NCBI GenBank assembly: GCA_000708835.1
Contig: DF237109.1
Coordinates: forward strand, 129,990 to 166,667
Source of the DNA: Klebsormidium nitens
Lineage: Eukaryota; Plantae; Klebsormidiophyceae
Direction of reading: 5' to 3'
Length of the DNA stretch: 36,678 nt
Both the position numbers and the translations under genes were made by a program. Position 1 is the first letter of the stretch; each line of letters begins with the position of its first letter. Positions 1 through 7,480 of this stretch are shown here, in pieces. The notes below the pieces were generated by a model that searched no databases, was not told where the DNA came from, and saw only the letters and a list, made by a program, of their open reading frames with translations.

Positions 1-1401
1 TGAGCCTCAGCGCCGAAGAAATTGCTTCCCGGTCGGCTCAACCGAGGGGCGTCGGCCGAAAAGCTGACAGAATCAAGGGGCCTATACCGTATGTCACGAC
101 TCATGCACACTGCACAGCACCTATTTGGGGTGGTGAGACGAGCCGGCCGGATCAACACTGGAACGGTCGGCCCAGGCGCCGACAATCTCGAAAGTCCGCG
201 TCGAAGTTCAGACACTGCTTCCAAGTCACTCGGGGCCAAGTTTGAGTCACGAGTGGCGCGGCGGTACGGCCGGTGCTATCCTAGCTAGCAGGTTCGTTCA
301 ATTGTCGACTTTGTACATGCCCCGAGCACTTACATGGGTGGGATCCCCGGTGGGATACAGTTAACCGGTGACTCGTCACCGAGAGCTGCCGTAATTTTGT
401 GGGCGAAGTGTACCGGCCAAAGTTATCAGTGGTAGGCGCCGAGGACCTTCGACCGGGGACTTCGTGAAAGCTGCCGGCAGCGCACCACCTGACGAGAAGA
501 AGTCCGTACAGCTCCAGAAATCCGATGTGTGCTTGCCACCTGGAGCCTACAGTCCCATCGGATCGACCAACATCGACGCAAACTTCGGCGGTGAAACCTC
601 CCCGCGAGCGCGGCCGCGCCTGAGGCTCGGGCCAAAATGCGCGGCCGCCGCGCTCGACTGTGGCCGAACTTCGTTCTTGAAATACCGTCGGTCACCGCGC
701 CATGCACTTGGCCGACGTCCGTCGGACTCATGCGCGCCCGGGCCAGGTAATTCAGGAGTCAGAATCGTCAGGAGGCTGGGGCGGCCAAACTTAGGGCTGC
801 ATCGGGCGCCGCGCACCTAGCCGCCTGCCAACTTCAATCAGTTATAGGTTTTTAAGCTCACTATAATTTGAAAGCACCAAGCGTGGCCGGGCCAGGCCGC
901 GGCCGGGCTGCCCAAAATGCCAGCATGTAGCGTCTTTGCATATGGCTCGTGATGTAGGTCACCGAGATTACTAAAACGTAAGATAGTTTGCGGTCCTGAT
1001 TGCACGAGCTGCATTCATAACATGTTATAAATTGGAAATTACCATACATGGACGTCAACTCACTGCTAAACACCGCAAAGCTTGAAAGAACTACAACACC
1101 CGTGACTTGTTGAGCTTAGTGCTCAAGTGGCACAGCGTCCTCAAAGACCTGATTATGCTGCCGACCCTCCAATCATCGCATTTAGTACCGCTTGTCCCTA
1201 TACCCGCAATCATTGATTGTTTGTCCTGTCCGTCCGCGAAACTTGCTCTGCGTCTTATATGCTATGTGCGGCGCTACTGCCCGACTCTCTAATGTACATC
1301 TATAATACTGTCGAATACAAGTTCCGAGCTCTGCCATTTGTACACAAAGCAAGCTGTTTTTGACAAACACGGCGTCCCATCGCTTGTGCCGGCCCGCGCC
1401 A

Positions 1402-4400
1402 TCACCTGAGCAGGAACTGGTTGCCTGTTTCAAAAATGGCGGTGACGAGGGACCGCTTCAGGTCCTCAAACGTGTCGTAGTCGGGAAGCAGCAGCTCGTT
1501 GTAGCAGGTGTGTGCCTGCGCGAAGAAGCCAAAATCGAAATCTTATCCGTGCATAACCAACAAGGCTGCTGAAACAGCAGCTGGAACGATGCTGAACACA
1601 ATAGTCAGGCCGCTGAACACCCAGGACTATGTGCTGTCCAAGAAGCCCCGTTCTACGAGCGTCGTCTTCAAGTGACGTTATTGGACTGTCCAACGCTTAC
1701 TATGAAAAAGCATGTCCTGCACTAATTACTTGTGAGTAACCGCTGGCAACATTTTACGCCAGTGGCATTTTACATGCGTGGCAAGCCTCAGGACTCAAGA
1801 CTGAGACCCCATCGCCCCCCAAACTACTGGCCCCAAAGAGAGTCGCAGACTTCCTAGAGAGATCAGGAGCAAACTTCGCACCATGCTTGACATCCAGGCG
1901 AAACGAAGCGCTAGCATCTGCGTGCCCGACGCGGAGCTTGGGGCGGTACCTGCGGGAGGCGCGTAATGTCGGAGACGCGCACGATGTGGAAGGCCCGCAG
2001 GCCGTCACTGCCGCGTAGCCCCGCAAAGCCCTCCGGATACGGCACCTTGCTCGTGCCCGTCACGAACTGCAGCAGCCGAGCGCGCATTGCCTCGTCCCAC
2101 GACTCCACCAGCTGCGCAGCAGTACAGTCACCATTAGCAGCTGGAGGAATGAGCCAAGCATTGCCGACTCAGATTGTCTTGTGTTGGACCGTTGGAGAGT
2201 GGCAGGGGTGTAGATACAAAGTGGGAACCAAAGCCGAAATCAGTGCAGCCTTGGCAAAAGGGAGGAAGCATACGAAAGAAGCACCAACAATGCTCAAGCT
2301 CATTGCGCCAGCCAGATCAGGCCAGTATGAATTTCGGCCACGAGGATAAAGGGTATAACGGCCTTGTGAACTTGTGACAATCGAGGCACACGGCGTTCTT
2401 AAATCAAGGAAGCCGGGATCGTGGTATGCATCGCTCCTGTGTGGCATTTCAGGTGATGAAAATCTGTAGGTCGGATGTGAGCGCTGGGGCGATCGCACAT
2501 AATGGATCTTGTTTGGGGCGTCGGGCCTTGCCTGCCAGAACCAGATGATGATGGCGACCTGGTCGGTGTAGCCGGCCTTGTACACGGTGTGCGCGCGCCA
2601 GTCGCCGAGGTCCAGGTGCGGCAGGCCGCCCACCAGCCACTCCAGCTCGCACTCGTCGAACGGGTGCAGCAGCTCCAGCGCCACCACGCGCGACAGCCCG
2701 CCGCGCAACGCCGCCATCTGGGGCTCCACCGAGTCTGGACAGGACGGGCGAAGAAGATAGTTTCGATTATGGGCCAGTAAGCAAGGGCCGCAGGGCCGAT
2801 GATACCGCAATTCAGTGATTGGTGAGCACACTGAACAGTAGGTTTTCAAATCGTCAAACTCTTCTGCGCACGCGCCTGTGGGCACCACAACCAGCTAAGT
2901 AACCCCTCCCGTCCCAGTTACTGTTCACTGTGCTTGCTGATCTATTGGTGAGATAGAAGGCAGGGCCGGGCGCTTCTAGTGAGGAAAGAGCGCTTGACGT
3001 TGCACTAACTGCCCTCTCTTGGACCGGTAATTTTGCGCAGCCAGCAGCGTAGCAGCGGCGATCTACTGGCATAACAGAATTCAACAACTTCTGCAACACT
3101 CCTGCGTGGAGGTGATGCGGAATCGCCCCTTCTCAGCGAAGCTACGGGATCGCACATTTCTTAAGGATACATTTTCCCAATAAGTACAACCGTCGGGCTG
3201 CCACTCACATCCCAAGCTTCGAGCAACAAGTGTCCCGTCTAGCTGTCCGCGAGAGTGACCGAACGAGCCGCTCCCAGGTGGCTGCGGGCGGTGCTGCGCG
3301 CGCGTACCTTTGAGGCGCCACTCTGCGAGGAGGTCGACGTACTCGCGCTTGTTGTCCTGCGTGACGGGCATGTCCTGGCCCCCCGGCTTCAGCTCCACCT
3401 CCTCGTACGCGCCAAACGCCTCGCGCTCCACGCTGAACGTCAACCCCAGGTCCTGCTCCGACAGGTCGTTCTCAATCACCTGCGCAATGGCAGGGCCACA
3501 AGCGTCAAGACAAGAGGCGCCCGGTAGGAACAACTGAGCTGTAGTAGTGGAAGGGAGCAAAAGCTTGTCCTATCTACGATCGAGTCTGGCGTACTTTGGA
3601 GGTGCCTGGCGCTTAGCCAAAGCGAGTGGCCTTCGCATTCGGAGCACAGCGCAAATCGGCGCGATTGTGACTGGCACCCTCTTAACGCTTCGCTCCAGCA
3701 TGTCCCCTTACATCGTGCCTCCATGCCCAGGGTGTTCAGCCCCTATAGCATAGAGGGTGCTTTTTTAATCAGATATTCGTCTAAAGAAGAGGTCAAGGCT
3801 TCACGTTCTCGGGGGCAACTCCTCGAAATATGTTTTTGTGCTGGACAATTGGGAGGGACAATGACGGCCGACTTCGGGTCTAATATGCAGCAAAAGTTTG
3901 TATACTCCCAAGAGCATCAGACTGACATACCGGTGGACGATGAGCAAGCTTCAAGGCGCCTCACCCAGCAGAGCGACTTGTAGAACTGGACGTCGTGGCT
4001 GGCCATGTCGTGGTAGGTGACGGGCCGGCCCAGCACCCGCTTGTAGAACAGCCGCGTGAAGTGCACCCCTAGCAAGCACCCGTCCGCAACGGCCTTCCCG
4101 GCAATCGTGCCCACGAACCTGAGCGCCACACAGCGACGTCAGAGGGGTAAGGGCACTTGGCACGGGGGTGACTATCCCAGGAAACAACGAATCCACAATT
4201 TTCGGCTTGTCATTTCAAGTTAATCTGAGATGGTGATAGCTAGCGAAAGCTATTCCTTAAGTCTTTGTGCCTTGCCATAATACGAACGTCTTGAAAGCAC
4301 CCGCTTCCTCACAGGTACGGCAACAATAAGCATATCATCAACAGCGTGCGTCGTCTGGTGTCAAAACCTACCTACACGGCCCGAATGGTGCCTCGCACCC

Positions 4401-6279
4401 TGTCATGACCAACTTGCATCCACAATTGTGCACCCCCTTGAGCAACGCACGCACCTGAAGAAGTCAAGGTGGTCGGGGTTGACCCCCGAGTTGGGGTTGA
4501 CCTGGAAGGTGCCGTCGTCGGAGGCGGAGGCGGTGAAGAGGCCGTAATCCTCGTTAAACATTTGGCGGCTCAGCACGCTGTACCAGTCGCGCGTCACGCC
4601 GCCCTCGTCGCGCCCAGCCTCGTTCTGGAAGTGCACGCTTACGGGCAGCTTGAGGTCCGCATCCGTCACCCACGCAAACTGCGGCACAGCAAACGGGGCT
4701 GATATTGTAACCTTTGTTCGTAAAAAGCCATCATGCATTGCAAGGATACCCAATGGGAGGTTTAGTGTGTCCTGGAGGTCCGTGCCGTAACACTGAAGGA
4801 AAAAGGAAAGCAAACAACACATGATTGTTTATTGCCACCGTGGCTCATGGTATAATGAACCATGAAGCATTGGGAGTTAATGGGGTCCAACGCATCCCGG
4901 ATGCTTACCTGCGCGTATGAGTCTTGGAAGACTCGCTCCCTGCTGACTGTAATTGGCAGCACTTTCTTGCCGTTCTTGCCAATTATGGCTCGCCGCTCAG
5001 GCCCAACGTCCTGCTTAGCGGCGCGCGCAGTGATCTCCCTGCATCCAAGCGGCAACACCTCGGTAAGGAACATTACTGCGGTGAAACGGTGGGTCTTTGA
5101 CGAGATAGGCAATGCTGGGAATCAGACCCTCACAAAGCCGCAAAACTTTCCCAACTGGCGGAAAAACGCTGGGGCAAAAGAGAGCACCAACCTCAACATC
5201 AGAACCACGTTGCACTCTTCCGTTGCTTGCTAGAACAAACCTGATTACTGCCGGGACTCAGAAGACAGGTGACTACAGGTTTTTCTCAGCAGCTCTGCAT
5301 TCGAGCAGCAGCCAAGCTTGAGCGACAATGAGATGAAGCAACGGCTCAGAGCTACCAGATTGAGCGTCTTCCCTGACAATCAGCGGCCCCTTAAGTTCTC
5401 CGCCGACAAATTCAGAATGTGTCCAGAGAAGTAGGCGTGGCCGCACCTGAGAAGCCAGTCCCTTTTGAGCTGGAAGAGGCGCTCCTCAGAGAGCTCCTTC
5501 TCGCGCGCCAAGACTTCCTCAATCGACAGCAGCGTCTCGGGGCTGCCCGCGGCAGGGGCATCCACATCAATGACCACCTCGGACCCCTCCGATGGGCCTG
5601 TCAAGAGAGCGGCAGGCGCCACAGCAGGGAGGAGCGCGGGGGGGTGGTGAGCCACAGCCTGGCGCGCACCTGGGAGGGAGCAGGAGCGTCAGTTGTTGCG
5701 CAAAGTTTTGTGAGCTTCATAAGCAGGTCATGTCTTCACTCACTTAGTGAGAGGTGAACGAGCCATGTGTGTGGCGGGTCAAGGCAGAGCGTTCAGAGCG
5801 TGACTGCGCTCAACACAATGGCAGCGGCATCGTTAGAGTGACGACCCGGTTCCACGTAGGCACCCATGTTGATGAGAAAAGTCAGAGTCTGGCAATATCG
5901 GACCTGCTGAGAGAAGCAATGAGCTGCCACTATCATGTCAGGCCACGGGCGACAATCTAAAGCCCAGAGGGCACAAGGACTGAAAAAAAAGTGTATACAC
6001 CGGAACCAGCCCAGCCTCAGTGCTTGTCGACTTGTTCAAAATTCATAAACCTGGCCAGACATGTGTGATAACTTGAATGCCAACAGAGGCATGTGCGGGT
6101 GTGGAAGTAGAGAACTGATTTGCTGGTTTGTCCTCACCCCTCCTTCTGCGCCTCCGGAAGAACACGCACCCGAGGCCCACCATGGCTAGCACGAGAACGC
6201 CCACCCAAATACCGGCCCAGCCCGCCAGGGAAACACTGCTTGAGGACGCCCCGTCAGACGGGGGGCTGCCGCGGGGCAT
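1402..6279 (-). CDS. HECT-domain E3 ubiquitin ligase with predicted N-terminal transmembrane anchor (9 exons, 507 aa)
   Basis: Exons in transcript order: 6279-6138, 5669-5447, 5038-4909, 4678-4455, 4118-3965, 3479-3308, 2734-2532, 2111-1950, 1515-1402. Total 1524 nt, all junction phases compatible. HECT motifs: ITVSRERVFQDS, EAGRDEGGVTRDWY, VNPNSGVNPDHLDFFRFVG, ELKPGGQDMPVTQDNKREYV, RLLQFVTGTSKVP, catalytic AHTCYN, and Phe at -4 (QFLLR*). The HECT part is secure; exon 1 and the start codon are less so. Confidence 0.9.
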
Positions 6280-7480
6280 TGGCTCACCGCAACCCTCGTT
6301 CCGGCCACTACGCGTCTCTGCTAAATCCACCGAGCGTAGCCATCATCCTGGTTTCCTATTGTCTACTTGCTACTTCAGATGCGCGCGTGATCAAGCGGCC
6401 ACATTGTTCGGAGGTTTGCTCTCATAGGTTTCAAGATGCATTGGTCAGCTTGGAGGAAGTGGGGAGGCAGCAAACTGGGGCGCCGGGCTGCACAGTTAGA
6501 ACAACCAGTCAGACTGAGGTAAAAGGCATAGAGGAAGAGGCCCAATGCAAACCCTGAACAAGAAAGTTGCAGACTTTGTGCTCGGAATATCCTCGTAGCG
6601 GCTCAAAGCAAGGGTGAAGTGAGGAGGCGACGATGCTTGGGTTCCATTTGAGGGTTTCATGTGAGGGTTTGGTCATTGCTGCGATGATGACGCTGCTTGT
6701 CAACAATGAAGGGGGCTCCGTGCATTTCATGTCCACAGCAGACATGCAAAAAGTCGAATGAAACCTGATCAGGCAGTAAAGACCGGCCCGGAGTGTTTTT
6801 GTTCAGGTTACGGGTCATATTGACATTGGTTGCCTGCCCACTGCTTGGGATTCGGCACAGCGATGAAGAATAAGAGCAACAAGATTGCATTCGTTTTGTA
6901 AACTAAAGATCCCACGACATCAGTCGTGAGAGTCATCTTTTCTTGAAACCTTCCAGCAAGAGCAACGGAGGGCAACCCTAGATTCTTGCCAACCCTTAAA
7001 CCGGAGTGCGGAGCACCTCAAACTTTCAGGAAAAAGTGACAGCCGTTGAAAGCTCCCAAGAACAGGAATCAGAGCTCAGGGACGACACAGTACTGACTTA
7101 CAAATACATGCCAAATGGACCAGCGGACATTGGCATGCAAGGACCCAACCTTTCCAGGCTTCTGCACCTTGAGACTGCCCTTCACAGTGCCCACTGCCGT
7201 TGAGCAATCACAAAGGAAGACTCCCTCACCCTCAGTACTACTACTAGCTCCGTACTCCCTGTGCGTGGCCTTTGCTGCTGCAAACCCCGCCATGGACGGC
7301 TACTAGAGCTGCCCGGCCATGAGTCTGACGACTCTGACCGAGCCATGCACTGGACTTCTCTTTGCAGCCATGGCCCAAGCAGCTGTGACTGGACACCTGT
7401 CGGTGTCAGAGGTGCTTAGCTCCACACATGTGCCCCCAAATCCTTAATTCCACACGTGGGGCTAACTTGAACCCGGGCGG

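What the first reader, a model, noticed from the sequence alone, without database searches (positions are those of the whole stretch)
1402..6279. Compact membrane-anchored HECT E3 ligase: a transmembrane + poly-Arg exon splices in frame onto the HECT gene
Seen in sequence: the minus-strand exon 6279-6138 encodes MPRGSPPSDGASSSSVSLAGWAGIWVGVLVLAMVGLGCVFFRRRRRR. It ends at a good donor (G|GTGAGG, phase 1) that joins the next acceptor (CTCCCAG|GT, 5669) to make Gly, so all nine exons read through to an intact HECT domain (AHTCYN catalytic Cys, -4 Phe). The predicted protein is a short N-terminal segment, one ~23-aa hydrophobic helix, an R6 stop-transfer cluster, a Pro/Ala linker, a short charged helix and HECT, 507 aa in total. 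Established: land-plant UPL HECTs are soluble proteins with ARM/UBA/IQ/UBL N-termini, and membrane-tethered E3s in plants are mainly RING-type. Inference: an N-out/C-in signal-anchored HECT acting at ER, Golgi or plasma membrane, an architecture not part of the standard green-lineage repertoire. Hydrophobic N-termini do occur in some non-plant HECTs (e.g. AREL1), so horizontal origin or convergence should be tested.
Basis: partly seen in the sequence, partly recalled or inferred. Interest (0 to 1): 0.78.

Follow-up and report, generated by a model that had tools for sequence, protein, structure and literature searches.

The report
Membrane-anchored HECT ubiquitin ligase gene
This gene of the alga Klebsormidium nitens is expressed and encodes a ubiquitin ligase of the HECT type with a predicted single membrane anchor at its front end; the same design is conserved in streptophyte algae, mosses, liverworts and cryptophytes, and I found no paper that describes it.

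Summary
Spliced transcript contigs from four runs in four studies carry all eight junctions, including 6138|5669. The nine coding exons give a 507-aa protein identical to the public Klebsormidium nitens protein "Putative ubiquitin protein ligase". One addition: the ATG exon is 6487-6138 and follows a non-coding exon with three alternative donors.

The protein has:
- a short N-tail;
- a hydrophobic helix (about residues 21-41);
- an R6 cluster;
- a disordered linker of about 40 residues;
- a complete NEDD4/HUWE1-type HECT domain with catalytic Cys474 and Phe at -4.

It is neither an oddity nor a horizontal transfer. About 22 sequence clusters share the same design, including an invariant juxtamembrane Cys and a basic cluster. 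They come from Chlorokybus, Mesostigma, Coleochaete, Zygnematophyceae, mosses (Physcomitrium), liverworts (Marchantia) and cryptophytes. The family is one clade (100/99), and its streptophyte branch broadly follows the species tree. I saw no chlorophyte or vascular-plant member. AREL1 is not close.

Marín (2013) already placed this Klebsormidium sequence in a Subfamily V clade but never mentions membranes. Which membrane it sits in is untested.

The parts
7102..7293 (-). 3' part of a non-coding first exon, with three alternative donors (exon ends 7230, 7150, 7102). It carries an upstream ATG at 7293. The 5' limit is not determined.
   Evidence: The loose ends of contigs at 6487-6489 match window 7102.., 7152.. 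and 7231.. exactly. A GT follows each exon end.
6280..6487 (-). 5'UTR part of the ATG exon. The acceptor AG is at 6489-6488. It holds several short uORFs and an in-frame TAG at 6345-6343.
   Evidence: Contigs run 6135-6487 and then jump; sequence read.
6138..6279 (-). Coding exon 1: N-tail, TM helix and R6 (residues 1-47, plus 1 nt).
   Evidence: junction 6138|5669 seen in 4 runs.
6157..6219 (-). Codons for the predicted transmembrane helix, residues 21-41 (WAGIWVGVLVLAMVGLGCVFF). This includes the family-invariant Cys38.
   Evidence: Hydropathy; AF2 helix 18-54; conservation.
6139..6156 (-). Codons for the R6 basic cluster (residues 42-47).
   Evidence: 5-7 basic residues at this position in 19 of the 20 members tabulated; one environmental sequence has 3.
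5447..5669 (-). Coding exon 2: disordered Pro/Ala linker, then the start of the pre-HECT helices.
   Evidence: for the junctions; pLDDT is below 50 for residues 48-89, with helices from residue 91.
4909..5038 (-). Coding exon 3: end of helix α1 and the first HECT N-lobe strand.
   Evidence: HUWE1 6xz1_A aligns from model residue 110.
4455..4678 (-). Coding exon 4: HECT N-lobe.
3965..4118 (-). Coding exon 5: HECT.
   Evidence: PF00632 positions 42-93.
3308..3479 (-). Coding exon 6: HECT.
   Evidence: positions 101-151.
2532..2734 (-). Coding exon 7: HECT. It is followed by a GC-AG intron.
   Evidence: (ends 'CT..GC'), and (positions 154-221).
1950..2111 (-). Coding exon 8: HECT C-lobe.
   Evidence: positions 223-270.
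1402..1515 (-). Coding exon 9: catalytic Cys474 (TGC at 1506-1504), Phe at -4, and the stop TGA at 1404-1402.
   Evidence: positions 271-305. One search aligns it to the NEDD4 catalytic site.
1049..1401 (-). 3'UTR. Contigs end near 1049-1053.
   Evidence: table 8.

Best explanation
The locus is an expressed Klebsormidium nitens gene for a 507-aa single-pass HECT ubiquitin ligase anchored by its N-terminus.

Inferred topology and action:
- The hydrophobic helix (about residues 21-41) inserts into a membrane.
- The six arginines that follow keep the C-terminal side in the cytosol (N-out/C-in, type III topology).
- A disordered leash of about 40 residues then carries a complete NEDD4/HUWE1-type extended HECT domain: helix α1, the N-lobe, and a C-lobe with catalytic Cys474.
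- No substrate-binding domain is present. The most likely action is therefore that the enzyme accepts ubiquitin from an E2 on Cys474 and passes it to proteins within reach of the leash on the cytosolic face of its membrane. Specificity would come from co-localisation, helix-helix contacts or adaptors.

The most likely site is the endomembrane system or plasma membrane. The invariant Cys at the cytosolic helix end is a candidate S-acylation site.

Shown here: gene structure, splicing, domain content, conservation and vertical descent within streptophytes. Inferred: membrane insertion, topology, catalytic activity and which membrane.
For: Splicing and expression: 8 of 8 junctions in contigs from 4 runs in 4 studies.

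Start codon: an in-frame TAG at 6345-6343 lies in the same exon as ATG 6279, and exons 2-3 hold no in-frame Met.

Identity with public protein P0157.

HECT domain:
- Pfam 294.7 bits, positions 2-304 of 306.
- Exons 4-9 match the model colinearly.
- By sequence against PDB: NEDD4 339 bits, TOM1 336, HUWE1 326.
- AF2 model mean pLDDT 76.
- By structure against PDB: HUWE1 HECT Z 35.3 over model residues 110-507, NEDD4 Z 34.8.

Anchor:
- Kyte-Doolittle 2.43; helix 18-54 in the model; linker 48-89 at pLDDT below 50.
- Weak Pfam echoes of TM-juxtamembrane segments (ErbB1, Melan-A), well under their cut-offs.

Conservation:
- Every full-length member tabulated has an N-terminal hydrophobic stretch, and 19 of the 20 have 5-7 basic residues just after it. 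C38 and R42 are invariant in the 15-sequence alignment.
- The family is one clade (100/99*). The streptophyte subclade (95/93*) branches broadly as the species tree does.
Against: - No dedicated TM or signal-peptide predictor was available, and there are no localisation data.
- The leader carries several upstream ATGs, so translation efficiency from ATG 6279 is unknown. Starting at Met33 would cut the helix.
- In bryophytes and cryptophytes the hydrophobic stretch is only moderately hydrophobic (Kyte-Doolittle 1.0-1.6).
- That moderate hydrophobicity, with the strong basic flank, also fits signal anchors of organelle outer membranes.
- The small-x-Cys residues before the basic cluster could be read as a signal-peptidase site.
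- Catalytic activity is inferred only from conserved residues.
Confidence: 0.72

Rival explanations
1. Same protein and topology, but the anchor targets the outer membrane of mitochondria (or, in streptophytes, chloroplasts). It would then be a HECT counterpart of the organelle-surface RING ligases (SP1, MUL1, MARCH5 types) and would ubiquitinate outer-membrane proteins.
For: The review PMC4010795 summarises Lee et al. 2011. Signal-anchored proteins go to the organelles when TMD hydrophobicity is below 0.4 on the Wimley-White scale and three or more basic residues flank the TMD on the C-terminal side; that basic region acts as an ER-evading signal.

My calculation gives 0.29 for Klebsormidium and 0.40 or less for 19 of the 20 family members tabulated, 17 of them below 0.40. 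Nineteen of the 20 have 5-7 basic residues in the flank.

The signal is conserved in cryptophytes as well. Their plastid lies behind ER-derived membranes, so a shared target would more likely be mitochondria.
Against: - The scale values were recalled from memory, and the original paper's protocol could not be read. On the octanol scale several members lie at or above 0.4.
- N-terminal segments of up to 34 residues before the helix are long compared with the known outer-membrane signal anchors I recall.
- The Klebsormidium and Chlorokybus helices are strongly hydrophobic (Kyte-Doolittle 2.4-2.5).
- An invariant juxtamembrane Cys suggests S-acylation, which is typical of endomembrane and plasma-membrane proteins (from memory).
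Confidence: 0.28
2. The hydrophobic N-terminus is a cleaved signal peptide or organelle presequence, so the mature HECT protein is luminal, secreted or inside an organelle rather than anchored.
For: Small residues lie at -3 and -1 before the basic cluster in many members (A-G-C, S-A-C, A-A-C).
Against: - The hydrophobic core is about 20 residues, longer than the h-regions of signal peptides.
- It starts up to 34 residues from the N-terminus.
- Five to seven Arg/Lys directly after it oppose translocation of the C-terminal side (positive-inside rule, established knowledge).
- A HECT domain needs cytosolic E1, E2 and ubiquitin.
- The N-tail does not look like an amphipathic presequence.
Confidence: 0.04
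3. The TM exon is in the mRNA, but the main protein product starts further downstream and is a soluble bare HECT domain. This could come from leaky scanning past ATG 6279 in a uORF-rich leader, or from minor transcripts that start inside intron 2 at ATG ~5072.
For: Several upstream ATGs and uORFs lie in the leader. An in-frame ATG in intron 2 could open MFLTEVLPLGCREITA.... Some database models of relatives lack the N-terminus (P0005, P0284).
Against: - Word depth over intron 2 (the 5137-5333 bin) is 0 in all four runs, while the flanking exons are in the hundreds.
- Exons 2-3 hold no in-frame Met.
- The helix, Cys38 and the basic cluster are conserved across two deeply separated lineages, the streptophytes and the cryptophytes. 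That requires translation of this region.
Confidence: 0.05

Closest known systems
Plant HECT Subfamily V (UPL1/UPL2/UPL8; animal HUWE1; fungal TOM1). Specifically the early-diverging clade in Marín 2013 (PMC3712016, File S5) that holds Klebsormidium JO257519.1, Chlorokybus, Pellia and two Physcomitrella genes.
   Same: This very Klebsormidium sequence is in that paper's alignment and tree. The HECT domain is highly similar to HUWE1 and TOM1: 326-336 bits, Z 35. The motif before HECT, F-x-L-K-R-x-W-L, lines up with F-D-N-K-R-x-[YF]-F of the HUWE1 type (read by eye).
   Different: It has no ARM-like, UBA or WWE regions. It is 475-551 aa instead of more than 3000. It has an N-terminal membrane anchor, which the paper never mentions (0 hits for 'membrane'). 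In my tree it is a separate clade from fungal TOM1. No plant UPL1 sequence was available to me for that tree.
NEDD4/Rsp5 family (C2-WW-HECT)
   Same: It gives the best sequence match among solved structures (NEDD4, 339 bits). The extended HECT with helix α1 is the same. NEDD4 ligases also work at membranes, on membrane proteins (established knowledge).
   Different: NEDD4 ligases reach membranes through a C2 domain and PY-motif adaptors, not through an integral helix. There are no C2 or WW domains here. The NEDD4 clade is separate (100/99*).
Membrane-anchored RING E3 ligases of plants (ATL, RMR, SP1, Hrd1, Doa10 types)
   Same: An E3 catalytic module held on the cytosolic face of a membrane by transmembrane helices. 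Two such RING genes were noted elsewhere in this genome by the scan.
   Different: The catalytic chemistry differs: HECT forms a thioester on its own Cys, while RING acts as a scaffold for the E2. There is no sequence relationship.
AREL1 (KIAA0317)
   Different: Its HECT domain is distant (187 bits, at the level of E6AP), and it is not near this family.
Type III (N-exo) single-pass proteins with a TMD-Cys-basic juxtamembrane region (Melan-A, synaptotagmin, ErbB1 juxtamembrane)
   Same: The pattern is the same: a helix, then Cys/Trp, then an Arg/Lys run. There are weak Pfam echoes (MLANA E 0.007-0.026, TM_ErbB1 E 0.035-0.04), all below their cut-offs.
   Different: These are resemblances of a short, low-complexity pattern, not homology. 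No functional link is implied.

Membership tests
HECT E3 ubiquitin ligases (PF00632) | Full-length HECT domain match above Pfam's gathering score | tested here: met
   294.7 bits against a cut-off of 23.9, profile positions 2-304 of 306. Exons 4-9 match colinearly.
HECT E3 ubiquitin ligases (PF00632) | Catalytic Cys in the C-lobe, and a conserved Phe four residues from the C-terminus | tested here: met
   Cys474 in AHTCYN aligns with the catalytic-site motif AHTCFN of NEDD4. The Cys is invariant in the family. The tail is ...QFLLR.
HECT E3 ubiquitin ligases (PF00632) | Bilobal HECT fold | tested here: met
   AF2 model against the HUWE1 HECT 6xz1_A: Z 35.3, 380 residues aligned, rmsd 4.1. Against NEDD4 2xbf: Z 34.8.
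HECT E3 ubiquitin ligases (PF00632) | Forms a ubiquitin thioester and transfers ubiquitin | not testable with these tools
   Needs a biochemical assay.
HUWE1/TOM1/UPL1 group (Marín Subfamily V) | Large N-terminal ARM-like solenoid with UBA or WWE modules | tested here: not met
   No Pfam domain other than HECT. Only 146 residues lie before the HECT core.
HUWE1/TOM1/UPL1 group (Marín Subfamily V) | HECT domain groups with the subfamily in a phylogeny | tested here: inconclusive
   It is in Marín's Subfamily V tree, as sister to the rest. In my tree it is separate from both fungal TOM1 and NEDD4. No plant UPL1 or UPL2 sequence was in my set.
NEDD4 family | C2 and WW domains N-terminal to HECT | tested here: not met
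   No PF00168 or PF00397 match. It lies outside the NEDD4 clade.
AREL1-like HECTs | HECT domain closest to AREL1 | tested here: not met
   187 bits, against 326-339 bits for HUWE1, TOM1 and NEDD4.
Type III (N-out/C-in) signal-anchored membrane proteins | One N-proximal hydrophobic helix of at least 19 residues, with more positive charge on its C-terminal flank | tested here: met
   Kyte-Doolittle 2.43 over 19 residues. The C-flank is +7 and the N-flank 0. AF2 helix 18-54.
Type III (N-out/C-in) signal-anchored membrane proteins | Not cleaved; integral to the membrane with the C-terminus in the cytosol | not testable with these tools
   No SignalP, TMHMM or experimental data were available here.
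Signal-anchored proteins of the mitochondrial/chloroplast outer membrane (rule of Lee et al. 2011 as given in PMC4010795) | TMD hydrophobicity below 0.4 on the Wimley-White scale | tested here: inconclusive
   0.29 on the interface scale and 0.39 on the octanol scale for Klebsormidium. The scale values came from memory, and the original protocol could not be read.
Signal-anchored proteins of the mitochondrial/chloroplast outer membrane (rule of Lee et al. 2011 as given in PMC4010795) | Three or more basic residues in the short C-terminal flank of the TMD | tested here: met
   Seven in the 12 residues after the helix, and 5-7 in 19 of the 20 members tabulated.

The most novel reading that the evidence does not exclude
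This family may be an ancient integral-membrane branch of the NEDD4/HUWE1-type HECT ligases. It would have been present in the common ancestor of streptophytes, and possibly earlier, since cryptophytes share it. It would serve as the resident HECT ligase for membrane proteins in lineages that lack C2-WW NEDD4 ligases, either sorting or degrading endomembrane or plasma-membrane cargo, or policing an organelle surface. It would then have been lost in vascular plants. The conserved juxtamembrane Cys (S-acylation?) and a UIM-like motif next to the anchor in most lineages would be part of its regulation.
Probability: 0.35. Interest if true: 0.72.

Novelty: new variant of a known kind. Interest (0 to 1): 0.58.

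Why it matters
HECT ligases are usually described as soluble enzymes that reach membranes through lipid-binding domains or adaptors. In plants, the membrane-resident E3s described so far are RING-type.

Here a complete NEDD4/HUWE1-type catalytic domain is joined to an integral anchor by a short leash. The design is conserved from the earliest-branching streptophyte algae to mosses and liverworts, and in cryptophytes. No vascular-plant member was seen.

This gives a concrete, testable case of a membrane-resident HECT. Orthologues exist in two organisms where gene knock-outs are routine: Marchantia polymorpha Mp7g16120 and Physcomitrium patens XP_024386704. It also gives a gene-loss event to set against the changes in membrane-protein turnover and organelle quality control in vascular plants.

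It also corrects the published picture of this clade, which was filed with the giant UPL1/HUWE1 proteins on the HECT domain alone.

Tried and rejected
- **Horizontal transfer or convergence with AREL1:** rejected.
- **Marín's "Subfamily IV" of short HECTs:** I considered it first because of the size. I rejected it because that subfamily is E6AP/HECTD2-like, and this sequence is in the Subfamily V file.
- **Alternative start in intron 2 (ATG ~5072), or further coding exons upstream:** rejected. Intron 2 (5137-5333 bin) has zero depth, and a TAG at 6345-6343 closes the frame upstream.
- **Pfam support for a UIM:** only one member matches, at E 0.91. The motif therefore rests on a pattern count alone.
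- **Naming the large proteins that matched exon 4, to obtain plant UPL1:** all 17 that I looked up were fungal TOM1-type or unnamed, so my tree has no plant UPL1.
- **Reading Lee et al. 2011 for the exact hydrophobicity protocol:** the paper is not held.
- **Literature searches:** phrases such as "transmembrane HECT" and "membrane-anchored HECT", and the accessions of the Marchantia, Physcomitrium and Pellia orthologues, found nothing. Two general HECT surveys never mention transmembrane segments.
- **Stray contig ends:** two contigs leave the window sequence at 1071 and 2627 into letters that are not in the window. I treated them as assembly chimeras or distant joins and did not resolve them.
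- **Searching with the spliced protein:** it has no reference of its own, so I searched with exon pieces and then with the identical database protein P0157.

Full report
**1. The observation**

- ATG at 6279, and a first coding exon ending at 6138 with donor GGAGGG|gtgagg.
- Acceptor ctcccag|GTG at 5669, giving Gly48.
- Nine coding exons: 6279-6138, 5669-5447, 5038-4909, 4678-4455, 4118-3965, 3479-3308, 2734-2532, 2111-1950 and 1515-1402.
- Together 1524 nt, or 507 aa, ending ...AHTCYN...GNQFLLR, then TGA at 1404-1402.

All introns are GT-AG except intron 7, which is GC-AG.

**2. Transcript evidence**

None is on record as RNA. I laid the contigs of four runs from four studies on 1000-6900.

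All four runs have contigs spliced at all eight junctions, at exactly these positions once the stated cut shifts are applied. For example, 5666/6135 "+3" equals 5669|6138. Word depth is in the hundreds over exons and about 0-17 over introns. These are therefore RNA-derived assemblies, and the TM exon is part of the HECT mRNA.

The contigs also show that the ATG exon begins at 6487, after an AG at 6489-6488. There it is joined to three different upstream sequences. These map to window 7102.., 7152.. and 7231.., and each is followed by GT. So there is a non-coding first exon with three alternative donors.

In the ATG exon a TAG at 6345-6343 closes the main frame upstream of ATG 6279, and exons 2 and 3 contain no in-frame Met. 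ATG 6279 is therefore the first possible start of the HECT frame. The leader holds several uORFs, including ATG 7293.

**3. Identity**

Exon pieces match Pfam HECT colinearly over positions 2-305 of 306.

An exhaustive search with exon 4 found mostly fragments and fungal TOM1-type giants. It also found one 362-aa relative, P0005. A search seeded with P0005 returned P0157, "Putative ubiquitin protein ligase [Klebsormidium nitens]", 507 aa. P0157 is identical to my spliced translation.

The window is therefore Klebsormidium nitens, and the public annotation already has this model. Two earlier scan notes on other pieces of the genome name the same organism.

**4. Anatomy of the protein**

- *Hydropathy.* GIWVGVLVLAMVGLGCVFF has a Kyte-Doolittle mean of 2.43. 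It is followed by RRRRRR.
- *AlphaFold2, on a 15-sequence alignment.* Mean pLDDT is 76. There is one helix at 18-54, with pLDDT about 84-86 over residues 21-40. A disordered stretch at 48-89 has pLDDT below 50. Helices run from 91 to 130, followed by the HECT fold.
- *Structure comparison.* HUWE1 HECT 6xz1_A gives Z 35.3 over model residues 110-507. NEDD4 2xbf gives Z 34.8 over 99-500.

By sequence against PDB, NEDD4 scores 339 bits, TOM1 336 and HUWE1 326. AREL1 and E6AP score only 187. No other Pfam domain is present.

The protein is thus an anchor, a basic cluster, a leash of about 40 residues, and a bare catalytic domain.

**5. The family**

The seeded search and a profile search with alignment A1 give about 22 clusters that score 583-835 bits. 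Everything after them scores about 500 bits or less and is TOM1, HUWE1 or NEDD4.

Named members:
- Streptophyte algae: Chlorokybus, Mesostigma, Spirogloea, Coleochaete, Netrium.
- Mosses: Sphagnum, Ceratodon, Physcomitrium patens (XP_024386704).
- Liverworts: Marchantia polymorpha (Mp7g16120), Riccia, Calypogeia, Apopellia.
- Cryptophytes: Guillardia/Hanusia, Rhodomonas, Cryptomonas.

Unnamed environmental sequences are also members. No chlorophyte, lycophyte, fern or seed-plant protein appeared among the 120 best hits. This absence is limited by the word-based candidate step of the search.

Every full-length member tabulated has an N-proximal hydrophobic stretch. In most it ends in G/A-C-x-[WFHY], and in 19 of the 20 it is followed by 5-7 Arg/Lys; one environmental sequence has 3. 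In the 15-sequence alignment Cys38 and Arg42 are invariant. So are the F-x-x-K-x-x-W/L pre-HECT helix and the tail G-x-x-F-x-L-R.

Among the 268 relatives then in hand, no protein outside this family had such an N-terminus.

**6. Phylogeny**

I built a maximum-likelihood tree of 49 HECT domains.
- The family is one clade (100/99*).
- A streptophyte subclade (95/93*) has Chlorokybus plus Mesostigma at the base. Klebsormidium, Coleochaete, the Zygnematophyceae and the bryophyte clade then sit in an unresolved group. That order is consistent with the species tree, so descent looks vertical.
- A second subclade holds the cryptophytes and environmental sequences (100/100*).
- NEDD4 (100/99*) and the fungal TOM1 group are separate.
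- No plant UPL1 sequence was available to me.

Horizontal origin of the Klebsormidium gene is rejected. How the cryptophyte clade arose, by common ancestry or by transfer, stays open.

**7. What was already known**

Marín 2013 (PMC3712016) includes this very sequence, as TSA JO257519.1, in its alignment. Its Subfamily V tree shows the clade (Physcomitrella ×2, Pellia, Klebsormidium, Chlorokybus) with support 1.00. This fits the duplicate that the text describes as arising early in streptophytes and later lost in spermatophytes.

That paper, and the survey of Grau-Bové et al. (PMC3673628), never mention transmembrane segments. Phrase searches and accession searches found no paper that describes a membrane-anchored HECT of this kind.

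So the gene, the protein model and the HECT clade are known. The anchor as a conserved feature of the family appears to be undescribed in the literature I could search.

**8. Mechanism**

*Shown:* structure of the gene, expression, domain content and conservation.

*Inferred:*
- The helix inserts with the basic flank in the cytosol (positive-inside rule: +7 against 0).
- The HECT domain then hangs on a flexible leash at the cytosolic face. It ubiquitinates proteins nearby after taking ubiquitin from an E2 on Cys474.

Which membrane is open.
- *For the endomembrane system or plasma membrane:* the Klebsormidium and Chlorokybus helices are strongly hydrophobic. The N-tails of up to 34 residues are long. 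The invariant juxtamembrane Cys recalls the TMD-Cys-basic pattern of type III proteins. The weak Pfam echoes of Melan-A and ErbB1 TM segments are below their cut-offs and are not homology.
- *For an organelle outer membrane:* the review PMC4010795 gives a rule of Wimley-White hydrophobicity below 0.4 plus three or more basic residues. My approximate values are 0.29 for Klebsormidium and 0.40 or less for 19 of the 20 members. The scale was recalled from memory, and the original paper could not be read.

I put the endomembrane system or plasma membrane slightly ahead.

**9. Side observation**

Directly after the basic cluster, 11 of 20 members carry a UIM-like core, Φ-x-x-A-Φ-x-x-S-x-x-[DEQN]. 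These are the bryophytes, Coleochaete and the cryptophytes; 0.05 members would be expected from shuffled segments, although the members are related. Pfam gives almost no support. Klebsormidium lacks the motif.

**10. Verdict**

This is a membrane-anchored HECT by every sequence criterion I could apply. It is a conserved, vertically inherited family of streptophytes and cryptophytes rather than an outlier or an import, and its HECT clade was already catalogued.

The new point is the architecture of the family and its apparent loss in vascular plants: a new variant of a known kind, of moderate to good interest. It can be tested directly in Marchantia and Physcomitrium.

Noticed in passing
window 6487-7293 (- strand): The 5'UTR is split by an intron with one acceptor (exon starts at 6487) and three alternative donors (exon ends at 7102, 7150 and 7230). 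The leader carries several upstream ATGs and uORFs, including ATG 7293.
   Followed up: partly
window 2530-2531 (- strand): Intron 7 has a GC donor (TGGCAG|gcaagg), making it a GC-AG intron. The spliced contigs of all four runs confirm it.
   Followed up: yes
alignment A1, just after the basic cluster (P0151-P0155, P0177, P0185, P0273, P0405): A UIM-like core (e.g. DLAAAIQLSIND, IQQAVSISIQN) sits next to the membrane anchor in bryophytes, Coleochaete and cryptophytes. It is present in 11 of 20 members, against 0.05 expected from shuffles. It is absent in Klebsormidium, and Pfam UIM support is negligible.
   Followed up: partly
window 6166-6168 (- strand), codon of Cys38: A Cys at the cytosolic end of the predicted helix is invariant in all 15 aligned family members (G/A-C-x-W/F/H/Y, then the basic run in most). 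It is a candidate S-acylation site.
   Followed up: no
family members P0164, P0165, P0177, P0185, P0170, P0294: Cryptophytes and related environmental sequences form a well-supported sister clade with the same anchor-leash-HECT design. This suggests an origin older than streptophytes, or an old transfer.
   Followed up: partly
window 1071 and 2627: One contig of run X2 and one of run X7 leave the window sequence at these points, into letters that occur nowhere in the window. They may be assembly chimeras or distant joins.
   Followed up: partly
window 1491-1978, 2178-2514, 2730-3294, 6460-6900: Low-depth unspliced contigs (depth about 4-17) cover several introns. This is consistent with pre-mRNA or a little genomic DNA in the libraries.
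   Followed up: no
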